The notes under the pieces were generated by a model. The model searched no databases, had not been told where the DNA came from, and saw only the letters and a list, made by a program, of their open reading frames with translations. The translations under genes were made by a program, and so were the position numbers. A stretch of 64,000 bases of DNA from Bugula neritina (taxonomy: Eukaryota; Animalia; Bryozoa), in assembly GCA_964035545.1 (NCBI GenBank), contig OZ037773.1, positions 9,887,751-9,951,750 on the forward strand. Reading direction: 5' to 3'. Shown here one piece after another: positions 9,241-59,013 of the stretch (positions are counted from its first letter, which is position 1; every line of letters begins with the position of its first letter).

Positions 9241-12200
9241 TCAGTTGCTTACTTTACACGTCCAGTAGTGCATAACACAGATATTCGGTACATCTGGAGA
9301 ATATGGTGAGTTCCAGCAGCGGCAGCTACAAGAGATAACTTAATGGCAGCTTCTCTTTCACACAGTGCTTTATCATACATACTCCAGTATAAGATGATTT
9401 AAATAATATTTAAAATAACAAATAGTTTCATTAATAAACCGTTTTATATCATTAGGCATGTCTTTGATGATTGAATTTATTAAGAATCCGTGTACGTATA
9501 TACACATGTATTATACTGTGCAGTAACCAATCACAATGCATGTCTTATATGAATACACATGTATACTGTGCAGTAACCAATCACAATGCATGTCTTATAT
9601 ATGAATACACATGCATACTGTGCAGTAACCAATCACAATGCATGTCTTATATGGATACACATGCATACTGTGCAGTAACCAATCACAATGCATGTCTTAT
9701 ATAAATAAACGTGCTATAACTGTATCTGACAAGCTTACATCATATTTTATGCTATGTGAAACTATTCTGAGATATTGCCAGCTGTGCCCTAGCTAATGTG
9801 TACTAAATAGAATTATAAGCTGTAACTACTGAATGAGAAATATGCATACTCTGCTCTATTCTATTATTGTGATCAGCTATATTGTCAGCTTCTACTGTCA
9901 GCATATACATAGAAAAGCAGAGCTTCTTATAAGTTATCTAACTGTAACCTTCTATATCACCCACTTGTACTGTGAGAGTCCCAACAAAAAGTGCATATTT
10001 CACTTAACAAACAATGAAGAAAATGTCAAGTTCAACAGAGTTTTCTAATGTAATCTATATTTGAATGAGTTTTTACAAACCACTTGCTCAAAACATTCAA
10101 ACTCTCATTGGCTTTTTGGAGATGTTTTGAATAAAATATTGTTGGGAGTTGAAATCTTACCTGTATGAAGTTCCATACCCAATCCTCTTTACATTCAGCA
10201 GTGCGCCAGAAGTATCTTCAGAACTACACTTGGCTGATAAAACTCTTGACTGCAAAAGTTATAGCTTCAAAGAATTAATTAAAAAGTTGTTATAAACATA
10301 ATACTCAACGTTATGCATTATAAACTTTTGTGACTGTTTCTGGTACTTTATGCCTGTGCAATAAATTTCAGAGTGCTTCAGAACAAAAATAACAAAACAA
10401 AAACACCGTAAACATACATCTATATATAAACGAATTTATGCCATTCAAAATTACACAATGCATGCACTTGTAATATAAGCTGTTTCTTCTGTTACGTTAC
10501 ATAATTTGTCTTCCATTCCACAGATTTAACAAATAAAAAGTTTTTAAGGATGCAGAAAAGATGAATACCAATGCAAATAATAACTTATGAGACATCAGAA
10601 AAAGTTATTACCATTGCTTTTCAATGAATATTTTACCTATCAGATCTTTGTGTGTCTACTTTTTGACACACATATCAGTCTCCAAACTCACTAACCTTAG
10701 CAGTATCTGAAACTTCAATTGTCTCAACACTTTCATCTGACAGGAATGAGTTAATCTGTGATTCCTTGTTATAATAGCACAGAGATGGGTCGATGGGTCC
10801 GGGTAGTCCCTGCATGGAGCATAAGGAATGAACAGAGTACTGCTTTAACATGTTTTTATTCATATTTCAGATTTACCCCCTTTTGGAAATGAATAAATAA
10901 ATTTATGCATTCATTTAGTCACAAAAAACACAAACTTGCTGTATTAAGTAAAATCCTGCTTTTAATTAGCTTAAAAGAAAATTCATAATTTAAAGAAAGA
11001 AAGATTAGTTTAAATGATCGAATTCGTAAACTTGGTTTTTTAAATATTCAGAAATGATAAAAAATATTGTAAAAGTTTAGGTCAACATTGCATTGGAAAC
11101 TATAGTATGAATATCATAACAAACAGAAAAATTGACATATCAATATGATGCAAAACGTCGGGAGGATAAGTATAAGCTAATAACAGACAAAGATTTAAAC
11201 TGTTGCAATTATATTTTGAAACTGAGGCATACCTTGGGACCAGCTTCTCCTGTAATTCTCTGTAAATCAAGTACATAGTTCGTTTTAAATTACGTCGCTC
11301 TAAACATGGCTGGTGAAGTACATATATAAGATTGGATGAAAATACTGTGTGTATGAAGCTCAGTATATACTACAACAAGTGAGTTTGTTTTGGAGTTGTT
11401 CTACTTGCATGATAATTGATTGACATTAGCGAACCTAATCAGTCAAATCTTATATCATGTCTATAGTACAACTGAAGGATTTTCAATAGTTATTTTAAGG
11501 TATATATTATATGATATTCTGGTATACATTGTAAATGTTTTCATCAGAATATTATATATATATATATATATATATATATATATATGACTTACATTCATAG
11601 CTGACTGCCATATTCTTTTTTGGTATTGAAGCTGAAACATGGTACCATAAATTAAAATAGTTTTTTTCATTTTGCGGTTTTGCCACAGATTTCAATGAGC
11701 CACCAACATTTATTCAATTTCAGCTTGTTATAAGCTTATTGTCTATTATGAAAAGCTATAGAATTATAATAACTTCTACTATAATCAGTCAATAGGCCTA
11801 AAACCTTACAGTAGTATACAGTCATATTATTTGCAAAGTGATTAATAAACACTAAATCACTGTTAAATTTATCCTACAACTTGTTAATTACACAATTTTC
11901 TTACAAAAAAGTCAAGCAAGTTTATAGTTGATATCCCGTGAGAATCCCTAAGTTTTTCTTAAGCAGGCCAAGAAGTTATTCAATATTATATCACAGGCCT
12001 GGGCATATATGAATCGATATTCTTTCTAGCATCACCATTGACCTTTACTGGGGTTGGAACCCATGCATGCTGCAAGCTTACTAAACCAGCGCTCTTTTCC
12101 CTAGACCACTGCAGCTGCCCCCTTTTATTCGTTCTTACAAGTTCATTTAATATGAGTTATTTTTATTTAAATTTGCCTTTTACCAGTGTTCGAAGCCACA

Positions 12201-58200: not shown

Positions 58201-59013
58201 TGGGACTATAGTATTATACAAGCAACTTAAACTAGTAATGATACGTTAGTTCAATTATTGGGTGTGAAATATTTCAGCTACTGTTTACTGTCTGTAGAAT
58301 AAATTAGATAACTATTATAGTGTTTATTCTAAGACACACCTATAAAATGTATCAATGATCTTTAATGAATAAGTCGTATAATATAGTCATTATCAAGTTG
58401 AATAAATTTAATAAAGGAAAACTGTTGAATATATTTTACAATTTAAGTCATACAATATATTTATAATTAAGTCATAATTTCCTGTGCCACATATAAATAA
58501 GCCCTTAGCCCGCTTAAACAACAAATCCTCCATCACGGGGTTTCTCACAGTGACTATAACAAACTTGTGCTAGTTAAATTTATTTATAAACTAGTAAGTT
58601 TTAATCATCGATATAGTAGATTTTCTTAATCAATAGCATTAGCAGACAAGTTGCTGTCTTGTGATTTACTTTGTGGAAGTTTTAGTTTCTTAACCAAAAA
58701 CATTGAATAGTAGTCAACACAGTAGAAGTATATTTTGTACAGTTGAAAGTTTTCATCAACTTTATTGCAGTAGCATGCCAATAAATCGGTCAGAACTTCG
58801 ATCAAGCTACTATAATTCTATAACTTTGACAGTGGAAGCTATAGTTTTAACATATATTAACACATGCTACAAACGTTATGTTTTAGAAAGTTTTCCTCAG
58901 GCAATATTTTTCTATATTTTAGTTGCTCATGTACAACAGTCGAGTCCACTGCCCCATCTGATGGAGAGTGTGCCATACATTACTGGACTTGTGCTCTGCC
59001 AGCCTCTGTATGA
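46260..59013 (+). CDS. Cluster gene E: type II membrane receptor-like protein with motif-rich cytoplasmic tail, ~514 aa, 13 exons
   Basis: Exons 46260-46455, 47514-47706, 53507-53719, 53968-54036 (NIYEEM), 54370-54495 (RPLP, YSVP), 54791-55023 (NPLY; TM GISLLAILVSLAAMAIVLLTA), 55601-55680, 56084-56146, 56627-56686, 57044-57070 (GPIGEPGPQ), 57412-57516, 57965-58053 (EKIIAATCS), 58923-59013 (CSCTT...CAIHYWTCALPASV*). Total 1545 nt, open, all GT-AG. Confidence 0.88.
47757..47820. repeat. (TA)n microsatellite
   Basis: Seen directly. Confidence 0.95.
48878..49100. repeat. Degenerate minisatellite, ~22-bp unit (TCAATGGTGATCTTATATATGT) x ~9
   Basis: Recurrent TCAAT(G/A)GTGA motif at ~22-bp spacing. 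Confidence 0.8.
49411..49490 (+). mobile_element. Degenerate tRNA-like head (SINE family 2 or tRNA pseudogene)
   Basis: GTGTAATGGTTAGCACACCTGTGTGCAAGTCCGAGGTC resembles the 60335 element (GTGTAGTGGTTAGTGCGCTTGCTTGCAAGTCGGAGGTC); B-box decayed. Confidence 0.5.
56155..56452. repeat. Minisatellite, ~19-20-bp unit (CATAGTAGGGGGTGTGTCA) x ~15 in a gene E intron
   Basis: Seen directly. Confidence 0.93.
58495..58558 (+). mobile_element. 3' fragment of SINE family 1
   Basis: AATAAGCCCTTAGCCCGCTTAAACAACAAATCCTCCATCACGGGGTTTCTCACAG matches the 3' half of the 19695 copy. Confidence 0.55.

What the first reader, a model, noticed from the sequence alone, without database searches (positions are those of the whole stretch)
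9241..59013. Hidden five-gene cluster of type II collagen-stalk receptors with an unassigned 6-Cys head domain: candidate new recognition-receptor system
Seen: five paralogs (A-, B+, C-, D-, E+), mostly invisible to the ORF track because their exons are 27-240 nt. They share one layout: cytoplasmic tail, single TM, 60/63-nt heptad exons, a 27-nt Gly-X-Y exon (absent in B), then three exons of ~105/89/~90 nt with identical phases. These encode G-x-x-G-x6-C...[KR][IV]-x4-C...Y-x-C-x-C...C-x2-[HD]-Y-W-x-C. Established: type II TM + coiled coil + collagen + globular head is the layout of trimeric class A scavenger receptors (SR-A, MARCO, COLEC12) and ectodysplasin, but their heads are SRCR, C-type lectin or TNF and their tails are short. 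This head matches none of those Cys patterns, and the tails are ~110-350 aa with tyrosine motifs. From memory, similar HYWxC-ending domains follow collagen repeats in uncharacterised marine-invertebrate proteins; I know no family name or function. Inference: a locally expanded family of trimeric signalling pattern-recognition or self/non-self receptors.
Basis: partly seen in the sequence, partly recalled or inferred. Interest (0 to 1): 0.92.

Follow-up and report, generated by a model that had tools for sequence, protein, structure and literature searches.

The report
Orphan trimeric membrane-protein gene cluster
Five neighbouring genes of the bryozoan Bugula neritina encode membrane-anchored proteins that probably form three-stranded stalks topped by a small six-cysteine head found in no named protein family. 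They look like cell-surface recognition or signalling molecules, but nothing is yet known of their expression or ligands.

Summary
The window (Bugula neritina, 216-Mb assembly, contig C9) carries five paralogs, A-, B+, C-, D-, E+. Each is an open spliced frame of 8-14 small exons (27-237 nt) with AG/GT sites (one GC donor). All share one layout: cytoplasmic tail, one N-in TM helix, heptad stalk, 2-5 Gly-X-Y triplets, and a ~94-aa head with six invariant Cys ending C-x2-[HD]YW-x-C. These are the only five copies in the genome.

The only relative among 1.84 billion protein representatives is the ortholog of gene E, a B. neritina "hypothetical protein". Its AUGUSTUS model confirms nine junctions but misses two conserved 63/60-nt stalk exons.

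dN/dS is 0.19-0.40 for C vs D. For E vs its ortholog it is about 0.2 in tail and stalk and 0.9 in the head. The head has no Pfam, PDB or sequence match. An ESM Atlas model resembles an unnamed cnidarian collagen-linked family (TM 0.73-0.82).

A homotrimer of the ectodomain is predicted (ipSAE 0.70, best control 0.01).

- The "collagen stalk" is only 12-15 residues.
- Tyrosine motifs occur in C, D and E only.
- No RNA data were available.
- Receptor, immune or allorecognition function is inference.

Sibling notes of this scan on the same window cover sub-aspects. Nothing was found on other DNA.

The parts
9241..14511 (-). Gene A, minimal model of 8 exons and 236 aa: 14375-14511, 13114-13256 (TM), 12883-12935, 12397-12459 (63-nt heptad exon), 11233-11259 (27-nt RITGEAGPK), 10696-10809 (h1), 10161-10249 (h2), 9241-9325 (h3 plus stop)
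   Evidence: Open spliced frame with all GT-AG introns. Head exons.
19281..23880 (+). Gene B, 8 exons and 336 aa: 19281-19495, 20237-20428, 20763-20935 (TM), 21679-21752, 22118-22180 (63 nt), 22807-22914 (h1), 23186-23274 (h2), 23784-23880 (h3). It has no 27-nt Gly-X-Y exon.
   Evidence: Open spliced frame with all GT-AG introns.
25395..32677 (-). Gene C, 14 exons and 535 aa. Tail exons: 32643-32677, 31784-32011, 31270-31506, 30782-30925, 30212-30352, 29593-29709. TM exon: 29009-29235. Stalk exons: 28632-28675, 28251-28313 (63 nt), 27866-27925 (60 nt). Gly-X-Y exon: 27288-27314. Head exons: 26489-26593, 25782-25870, 25395-25485.
   Evidence: single open frame, all GT-AG. Exons conserved against D.
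33563..40575 (-). Gene D, tandem duplicate of C, 14 exons and 535 aa: 40541-40575, 39501-39731, 39086-39322, 38567-38710, 37999-38139, 37579-37695, 36718-36944 (TM), 36522-36565, 35956-36018, 35674-35733, 35386-35412 (Gly-X-Y), 34931-35035 (h1, GC donor), 34407-34498 (h2), 33563-33647 (h3)
   Evidence: dN/dS against C is 0.19-0.40.
46260..59013 (+). Gene E, 13 exons and 569 aa: 46260-46455, 47514-47706, 53507-53719, 53968-54036, 54370-54495, 54791-55023 (TM), 55601-55680, 56084-56146 (63 nt), 56627-56686 (60 nt), 56879-57070 (stalk plus GPIGEPGPQ), 57412-57516 (h1), 57965-58053 (h2), 58923-59013 (h3)
   Evidence: Nine exons from 53592 onward reproduce the exon structure of KAF6034810.1. The two extra stalk exons are conserved, with mostly synonymous changes. 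The first three exons are inferred from frame, splice sites, conservation and the MSG start shared with C and D.
27288..27314 (-). 27-nt Gly-X-Y exon of C (GPRGAKGPR). It is an example of the mini-collagen exon also present in A and D, fused to the preceding exon in E, and absent in B.
29009..29235 (-). TM exon of C. It holds the juxtamembrane tyrosine motifs (KPYTSI, HNYQSV), the RPPKKK stop-transfer flank, and the TM helix ILCFLIALASFLSLSAMAIST.
29593..30352 (-). Two tail exons of C carrying EGYAFI, DSYDNI and SNYATI. These are the ITIM-like motif and the first half of the ITAM-like motif. All are conserved in D.

Best explanation
This is a tandem cluster of five old paralogs on contig C9 of the 216-Mb Bugula neritina assembly. 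They encode type II single-pass membrane glycoproteins.

Shown or predicted:
- Each chain has an N-terminal cytoplasmic tail of about 70-350 residues with no known domain, one TM helix, and a 50-140-residue heptad stalk.
- A very short collagen-like hinge follows (2-5 Gly-X-Y triplets), then a ~94-residue all-beta head with six invariant cysteines.
- The ectodomain is predicted to form a parallel homotrimer. Contacts are heptad-spaced along the stalk and continuous through the Gly-X-Y segment. The three heads pack around a threefold axis lined by the conserved K-I-I/V-x-x-x-C strand.
- The genes are under purifying selection.

Inferred:
- The head trimer is the ligand-binding module. It is the only globular extracellular part. 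It is only 28-36% identical between A, B, C/D and E, and it evolves faster than tail and stalk.
- Ligand-induced clustering is passed to the conserved tails. In C and D these carry ITIM-like and ITAM-like Yxx[IV] motifs. In E they carry NPxY and YxxM motifs, pointing to phosphotyrosine signalling and/or endocytosis.
- The proteins therefore work like class A scavenger receptors or type II lectin receptors, with a different, so far unnamed head.
For: Gene models and selection:
- Models with canonical splicing.
- Five copies only, all in this cluster.
- C vs D dN/dS: tail 0.19, stalk 0.24, head 0.40.
- E vs the US B. neritina ortholog: overall 0.29 and head 0.92. Exon nucleotide identity is 93% against 87% for introns.
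- The independent AUGUSTUS model KAF6034810.1 joins tail, TM, stalk and head exons exactly as modelled.
- Two further 63/60-nt stalk exons are conserved, with 9 synonymous and 3 non-synonymous codon changes.

Architecture:
- Topology, 6 Cys per ectodomain, N-glycosylation sites, no furin site, and the tail motifs.
- Heptads.
- Homotrimer: ipSAE 0.70/0.68/0.70 against best control 0.01, pLDDT 74-75, at least 69% of contacts shared between runs. The mark was reached by 21 of 30 solved one-chain pairs and 0 of 23 single chains.

Orphan status:
- No known family for head or tails.
Against: - No RNA evidence. No RNA run was served, and the contigs laid were DNA.
- Ligand binding, signalling and cell type are wholly untested.
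- A and B lack tyrosine motifs. Such short motifs are common by chance in Ser/Thr/Pro-rich tails.
- The head's higher rate could be relaxed constraint rather than diversifying selection. dN/dS stays below 1, counts are small (13.5 N and 4.5 S changes in the E head), and the dS estimates are noisy.
- The trimer is a prediction made without an alignment. It was calibrated on pairs, not trimers, and coiled coils may score from memory.
- AlphaFold2 could not fold the head as a monomer (pLDDT 48.5 and 46.1), so the fold is not established.
Confidence: 0.45

Rival explanations
1. They are membrane-bound trimeric ligands or counter-receptors, working like ectodysplasin and other TNF-superfamily members. 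The head trimer would engage a receptor on another cell, and the tail would serve trafficking or reverse signalling.
For: They share the type II topology, trimeric stalk with a short collagen-like segment, and compact C-terminal trimeric head. Nothing in the data tells a receptor from a ligand.
Against: - No TNF homology domain was found, and the head has about 94 aa against about 150.
- No furin or dibasic shedding site lies in any stalk.
- Tails of 314-351 aa conserved at dN/dS about 0.2 are far longer than those of known TNF-family ligands (from my knowledge).
Confidence: 0.22
2. They are structural anchoring proteins, working like membrane-associated collagens (MACIT: XIII, XXIII, XXV). 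They would tie epithelial cells to matrix or cuticle, and the head would mainly nucleate trimer formation.
For: They are type II proteins with Gly-X-Y and a 27-nt (3 x 9) collagen-type exon. The nearest structural neighbour of the head is an unnamed cnidarian family in which 55% of members carry collagen repeats. The head packs as a trimer.
Against: - Only 2-5 triplets remain, B has lost the exon, and a 12-15-residue triple helix cannot be a matrix rod.
- Heads diverge fast between paralogs while trimer-core residues stay fixed.
- Long conserved tails with tyrosine motifs are not expected of a passive anchor.
Confidence: 0.12
3. They are allorecognition (colony self/non-self) determinants. This is a special case of the receptor reading, in which the heads bind each other or polymorphic partners between colonies.
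For: The animal is colonial. The genes form a clustered family with fast-evolving heads and ITIM/ITAM-like tails in C and D. No bryozoan allorecognition gene turned up in the literature search.
Against: No sign of exceptional polymorphism was seen. The contigs of the source run differ from the assembly at about the same low rate in head and tail exons. Two of the three changes listed in the C head are synonymous (my reading of the codons). Only one individual was seen, and only five genes exist.
Confidence: 0.06
4. They are not real genes, but chance open frames, decayed pseudogenes or repeat-derived sequence.
For: No transcript evidence was obtainable. Orthologs of four of the five were not found among public proteins.
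Against: - Five independent open frames of 8-14 exons have canonical splice sites and identical phases.
- dN/dS is well below 1, and exons are better conserved than introns, both between paralogs and between two Bugula lineages.
- One member was predicted independently by AUGUSTUS with transcriptome hints.
Confidence: 0.02

Closest known systems
Class A scavenger receptors (SR-AI/SCARA1, MARCO, SCARA5)
   Same: Type II single-pass orientation, homotrimer, extracellular alpha-helical coiled coil followed by Gly-X-Y and a small six-cysteine C-terminal head. The likely mode of action is also shared: a multivalent head trimer that binds ligand and triggers uptake or signalling.
   Different: The head is not SRCR (no Pfam hit, and the Cys spacing differs). 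The collagenous part has 2-5 triplets instead of dozens. The tails are about 70-351 aa rather than about 50 aa. No sequence similarity is detectable.
Collectin-12 (CL-P1/SCARA4) and type II C-type lectin receptors with coiled-coil necks (langerin, CD23, DC-SIGN)
   Same: A type II membrane protein whose coiled-coil neck presents a C-terminal recognition head as an oligomer. Some of these receptors carry tyrosine-based motifs in their tails.
   Different: There is no C-type lectin domain. The head has about 94 aa with a different Cys pattern.
Ectodysplasin-A / TNF superfamily ligands
   Same: Type II orientation, a short interrupted collagen-like segment, and a trimeric beta-rich C-terminal head.
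   Different: There is no TNF homology domain and no furin site. The tails are much longer. The head is about two thirds the size of a TNF domain.
Membrane-associated collagens with interrupted triple helices (collagens XIII, XXIII, XXV)
   Same: Type II orientation, a juxtamembrane coiled coil that nucleates trimerisation, and Gly-X-Y encoded by exons that are multiples of 9 nt.
   Different: Those proteins have hundreds of collagenous residues and no cysteine-rich globular head. Here the triple helix is vestigial.
Unnamed ESM Atlas cluster of cnidarian proteins (~379 aa, 135 members, 55% with PF01391 collagen repeats)
   Same: It is the nearest predicted-structure neighbour of the head: TM 0.73-0.82 by query over 87-92 residues. 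Its head also follows collagen repeats.
   Different: No sequence similarity was detectable. The last-exon profile found no cnidarian protein at E <= 1e-3. The match rests on one predictor's models, and my AlphaFold2 model did not reproduce it. The cluster's sequences could not be fetched, so its Cys pattern and topology are unknown.
KAF6034810.1 / A0A7J7K848_BUGNE, hypothetical protein EB796_006888 (Bugula neritina, GCA_010799875.2)
   Same: Ortholog of gene E: 91% amino-acid identity and identical positions for nine exons.
   Different: The public model starts at an internal Met and skips the conserved 63-nt and 60-nt stalk exons. The upstream tail exons appear to be annotated there as a separate gene. 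It carries no annotation.

Membership tests
Class A scavenger receptor | Type II membrane orientation with a trimerising alpha-helical coiled coil | tested here: met
   There is no signal peptide, and basic residues lie N-terminal of the single TM helix. Heptad periodicity beats shuffles. A trimer is predicted.
Class A scavenger receptor | Long collagenous domain (tens of Gly-X-Y triplets) | tested here: not met
   There are 4, 2, 5, 5 and 5 triplets in A-E.
Class A scavenger receptor | C-terminal SRCR domain (PF00530), where a head is present | tested here: not met
   Pfam gave no hit at E <= 10 for the ortholog's head or for single head exons.
Collectin-12 / type II C-type lectin receptors | C-type lectin domain (PF00059) | tested here: not met
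   No Pfam hit. The only PDB sequence hit, mannose-binding protein A at E 0.19-0.35, covers the Gly-X-Y part only.
TNF superfamily / ectodysplasin | TNF homology domain (PF00229) | tested here: not met
   No Pfam hit. The head has only about 94 aa.
TNF superfamily / ectodysplasin | Furin-type cleavage site in the stalk (ectodysplasin) | tested here: not met
   No R-x-[KR]-R occurs in any of the five ectodomains.
Collagen IV NC1 / spongin-type C4 domain | C4 domain (PF01413) with its six-Cys pattern | tested here: not met
   No Pfam hit. The Atlas feature scores of 0.78-0.82 are within the range of chance. The Cys spacing differs from that of C4 (my reading, from memory of the C4 pattern).
H-type lectin | H_lectin domain (PF09458), a trimeric six-stranded beta sandwich | tested here: inconclusive
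   No Pfam hit. The Atlas model's structural similarity is only TM 0.49. No confident model of my own was available for comparison.
C1q/TNF-like collagen heads | C1q domain (PF00386) | tested here: not met
   No Pfam hit.
Immunoreceptor-type signalling tails | ITAM (YxxL/I-x6-12-YxxL/I) or ITIM ([SIVL]xYxx[ILV]) that is phosphorylated and recruits SH2 proteins | tested here: inconclusive
   Motif matches occur in C and D (YATITNS[DE]IGKPYTSI; S[NY]YATI) and are conserved between the duplicates. E has NPLY and YEEM, both kept in the ortholog. A and B have none. Phosphorylation and recruitment cannot be tested here.

The most novel reading that the evidence does not exclude
The head would be the founding member of an unnamed trimeric recognition domain that is linked to collagen and is old enough to be shared by cnidarians and bryozoans. 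The five-gene cluster would be a bryozoan innate-immune or allorecognition receptor system that signals through ITAM/ITIM-like and NPxY tails. That would be an independent invention of the scavenger-receptor architecture with a new binding module.
Probability: 0.15. Interest if true: 0.75.

Novelty: new variant of a known kind. Interest (0 to 1): 0.5.

Why it matters
Bryozoans are a colonial phylum whose immune and self/non-self recognition molecules are essentially undescribed. My two literature searches found no described bryozoan receptor of this kind.

The cluster offers a concrete, testable candidate family. It has a familiar trimeric type II architecture, but its recognition head lies outside every curated family. 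It is also sequence-orphan among 5.8 billion proteins, apart from its own ortholog.

The case also shows how genes built of 27-240-nt exons escape or are mis-modelled by annotation. No orthologs of four of the five were found among public proteins. The one public model lacks two conserved micro-exons and probably its first three exons.

If the structural link to cnidarian collagen-associated proteins holds, a new ancient metazoan extracellular domain could be defined.

Tried and rejected
- **RNA support.** The look-up of sequencing runs gave no RNA run. Read laying on 25390-31389 showed only DNA contigs. Runs X2 and X3 hold exon-plus-flank matches at about 90% identity with different intron lengths, so they are a divergent lineage or a paralog, not transcripts. 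The reported joints are not at splice sites.
- **Pfam.** Single exons and tail exons gave nothing. One sub-threshold Toxin_21 hit (E 0.023) was ignored.
- **Other hits of the last-exon profile.** P0001, P0003, P0004 and P0005 are repeat proteins sharing only a short motif like "DYW-x-C". P0001 is a protein with 22 repeats of GNIDYWTCSxC. They are not relatives.
- **AlphaFold2 of the head as a monomer.** A single sequence gave pLDDT 48.5, and a correctly placed fragment alignment (A4) gave 46.1.
- **Fragment alignments.** Alignments of all three head exons of all paralogs were mis-placed by MAFFT. Only a reduced set aligned correctly (A4).
- The spliced heads of A-D have no reference, and I did not type them. 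Full-length A-D heads were therefore never sent to Pfam, HMM searches or structure prediction. Those tests were done only on the E ortholog (P0002) and on single exons.
- **Positive selection in the C/D head.** dN/dS is 0.40, so this is not shown. The lower dS of the tail (0.24 vs 0.72) may reflect gene conversion or noise.
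Full report
**What is there.** The window is AT-rich animal DNA (GC about 30%). Its genome has 216,009,554 bases and the window lies on contig C9. 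That size matches the 216.00-Mb Bugula neritina assembly (PMC11480708). The one public relative of the genes is also a B. neritina protein.

A six-frame motif search finds C-x2-[HD]-Y-W-x-C exactly five times: at 9256 (-), 23836 (+), 25413 (-), 33575 (-) and 58969 (+). Each hit ends an open frame bounded by a polypyrimidine-AG acceptor and followed within a few codons by a stop.

Two further exons lie upstream of each terminal exon and have the same phases in all five genes. Their sizes are 105-114, 89-92 and 85-97 nt. Spliced, they give a 94-97-residue head. It has 15 invariant positions, among them six Cys, the Y before C-x-C, and the YW near the end.

**Gene models.** I chained exons by frame and splice sites, using paralog similarity within the window as a guide.
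- Genes C and D are each 14 exons and 535 aa. Every intron is GT-AG except one GC donor.
- Gene B is 8 exons and 336 aa. Gene A is at least 8 exons and 236 aa.
- Gene E is 13 exons and 569 aa.

The shared order is:
- a short first exon (MSG... in C, D and E);
- tail exons;
- an exon holding the juxtamembrane region and the TM helix;
- a phase 1-to-0 exon of 44-80 nt;
- heptad exons of 63 and 60 nt in C, D and E, with only a 63-nt exon found in A and B;
- a 27-nt exon of three Gly-X-Y triplets in A, C and D (fused to a 165-nt stalk segment in E, absent in B);
- the three head exons.

Exon sizes run from 27 to 237 nt. This is why an ORF list shows almost nothing.

**Are they real genes?** Direct RNA evidence could not be had. 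The run search returned only three runs of one study, none on record as RNA. The contigs laid on gene C were genomic. The indirect evidence is strong.
- C and D are tandem duplicates. Their exons are far better conserved than their introns. Nei-Gojobori dN/dS is 0.19 in the tail, 0.24 in the stalk and 0.40 in the head.
- An exhaustive profile search with the last exon over 1.84 billion representatives found one genuine relative, P0002. It is KAF6034810.1, 'hypothetical protein EB796_006888', from the earlier US B. neritina draft. That draft was annotated by AUGUSTUS with transcriptome hints (PMC7576161).
- P0002 is the ortholog of E, with 91% amino-acid identity. Translating my nine exon coordinates on its contig reproduces the public protein letter for letter. 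The same nine junctions exist in the window.
- Between the two lineages, exons are 93% and introns 87% identical. dN/dS is 0.29 overall.
- The public model skips two stalk exons, 56084-56146 (63 nt) and 56627-56686 (60 nt). Both have strong splice sites and are open in both lineages. They differ by nine synonymous and three non-synonymous codon changes.
- The stretch upstream of the public model's start codon is also open and conserved. E shares the MSG start with C and D. The long-tail model is therefore likely but remains inferred.

**Family size and range.** The last-exon profile finds only these five copies in the whole genome. The ortholog's head finds only gene E. Word-indexed searches of 5.8 billion proteins, with the head and with the whole ortholog, return only the query itself.

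Orthologs of A-D were not found among public proteins. Other bryozoan genomes could not be searched, so the phylogenetic range is unknown.

**Architecture.**
- None of the five has a signal peptide.
- Each has one strongly hydrophobic 21-residue segment, with basic residues on its N-terminal side (for example RPPKKK in C and D). This predicts an N-in, type II orientation.
- Each ectodomain has exactly six Cys, all in the head. N-glycosylation sequons occur in B-E (none in A). No furin-type site is present.
- All five stalks show heptad periodicity that 0-4 of 300 shuffles reach.
- The collagen-like part is very short: GEAGPKGLPGPI in A, GPRGAKGPRGSPGFI in C, and similar in D and E. Only GLIGYF remains in B.

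The stalk is therefore a coiled coil with a 12-15-residue Gly-X-Y hinge, not a collagen rod.

**Oligomer.** Three copies of the ortholog's ectodomain (residues 184-370) were folded with controls. The score (ipSAE) was 0.70, 0.68 and 0.70, against 0.01 for the best of three controls. pLDDT was 74-75, and the runs shared at least 69% of contacts. In the tool's calibration the mark was reached by 21 of 30 proteins solved as one-chain pairs and by 0 of 23 solved as single chains. That calibration used two copies, and eukaryote passes may come from memory.

The contacts are spaced 3-4 residues apart from 221 to 260 and are continuous from 267 to 283, the Gly-X-Y segment. They then run head-to-head, between 313-331 and 345-366 or 284-291. 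Residues 315 and 316 of different copies touch each other. The conserved K-I-I/V-x-x-x-C strand therefore lines the threefold axis. This supports a parallel homotrimer but does not prove it.

**What is the head?** No known family could be assigned.
- Pfam gives nothing for the ortholog, for its head, or for the single exons. The best E-values, 0.05-0.14, are to unrelated families.
- PDB sequence searches, with the single sequence and with a profile, hit only mannose-binding protein A, through the Gly-X-Y residues.
- AlphaFold2 could not fold the monomer (pLDDT 48.5 and 46.1). Searches with that model were noise.
- The ESM Atlas holds its own model of the ortholog. Its head is closest (TM 0.73-0.82 by query, 87-92 residues) to an unnamed cluster of 135 mostly cnidarian proteins of about 379 aa, 55% of which carry collagen repeats.
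- Next come bacterial beta-sandwich domains (transglutaminase N-terminal, dockerin/LRR proteins) at TM 0.5-0.66, and H-type lectin at 0.49.

The cnidarian match is one predictor's view and is not backed by sequence. I treat it as a lead.

**Evolution of the parts.** Heads of A, B, C/D and E are 28-36% identical, so the paralogs are old. C and D are 59% identical in the head and 90% in the tail.

The head is the fastest-evolving part in both comparisons. dN is 0.29 in the C/D head against 0.05 in the tail. dN/dS is 0.92 in the E head against 0.20 in its tail. Still, dN/dS does not exceed 1 and the counts are small. Diversifying selection is possible but not shown.

The tails have no Pfam domain and are Ser/Thr/Pro-rich, yet they are constrained.
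- C and D share five Yxx[IV] motifs within 90 residues of the membrane. These include an ITIM-like S-x-Y-A-T-I and an ITAM-like YATI-x8-YTSI.
- E has NPLY and YEEM, both kept in the ortholog.
- A and B have none.

**Interpretation.** The best-supported reading is a family of homotrimeric type II cell-surface proteins that work like class A scavenger receptors or type II lectin receptors. A coiled-coil/mini-collagen stalk presents a variable head trimer, and the tail couples ligand binding to tyrosine-based signalling or endocytosis. Only the architecture is supported by tests. The receptor role is inference (confidence about 0.45).

A role as membrane-bound ligand or adhesion partner fits the same anatomy (about 0.22). 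A structural MACIT-like anchor is less likely given the vestigial triple helix (about 0.12). Allorecognition is a special case without supporting polymorphism data (about 0.06). An artefact is nearly excluded.

The family is not a member of the SR-A, collectin, TNF/EDA, C1q, collagen IV NC1 or MACIT families. In each case a defining domain was tested and not found.

**Novelty and score.** This is a new variant of a known kind: a familiar trimeric type II layout with an unassigned head and unusually long tails, restricted so far to Bugula. Lineage-specific receptor-like families are common in invertebrate genomes. Function is unknown here, so I score interest at 0.5, not 0.92. The finding would rise if the head proved to be an ancient collagen-linked recognition domain, or if the locus mapped to immunity or colony recognition.

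Other notes of this scan on the same window cover sub-aspects: C/D divergence, tail motifs, and an embedded Cys-rich gene. Nothing comparable was reported on other DNA.

Noticed in passing
window 56084-56146 and 56627-56686 (+); L007 about 5250 and 5748-5807: Two conserved stalk micro-exons of gene E (63 and 60 nt) are missing from the public B. neritina protein KAF6034810.1. That model also starts at an internal Met, although the frame upstream is open and conserved.
   Followed up: yes
window 2-400 and 5163-5561 (+): Two paralogous exons of rhodopsin-type GPCRs (Pfam 7tm_1 / Srw-like, E 4.5e-9 and 3.4e-6) lie just upstream of the cluster. They are 39% identical to each other.
   Followed up: partly
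window 15969-16238 (-): A cysteine-rich open frame lies between genes A and B (...CPDEECCTWHCRNLVPPYQFGRCRGRGDEMSCQCVNEEV...). It has no Pfam match.
   Followed up: partly
window 14845-14926: An 82-nt perfect palindrome: both strands translate to the same 27-residue peptide. It lies just upstream of gene A's first modelled exon.
   Followed up: no
window 9490-9715, 42650-42885 and 56160-56445: Tandem repeats occur in the last intron of gene A (period about 51 nt), between D and E, and in an intron of gene E between the two stalk micro-exons (period about 19 nt).
   Followed up: no
window 48698-52399: A stretch of about 3.7 kb in the long second intron of gene E has no counterpart in the US B. 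neritina contig (L007). It is probably a lineage-specific insertion.
   Followed up: no
window 46000-62000 vs L007: Introns of this assembly and of GCA_010799875.2 (Virginia, USA) differ by about 13%, and exons by about 7%. That is more than expected within one species, so the two 'B. neritina' genomes are probably different members of a cryptic species complex. Runs X2 and X3 of the same study also hold only matches of about 90% identity.
   Followed up: partly
window 34925-34930 (gene D, intron after h1): D uses a GC donor (AAT|GCAAGC) where its duplicate C has GT (AAA|GTGAGC). It is the only non-GT donor among the 52 introns modelled.
   Followed up: partly
genes C vs D, window 25395-40575: Synonymous divergence is three times lower in the tail exons (dS 0.24) than in the head exons (0.72), while intron identity is about 75% throughout. 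This suggests gene conversion of the 5' part or unusually fast change of the head exons. It is unresolved.
   Followed up: partly
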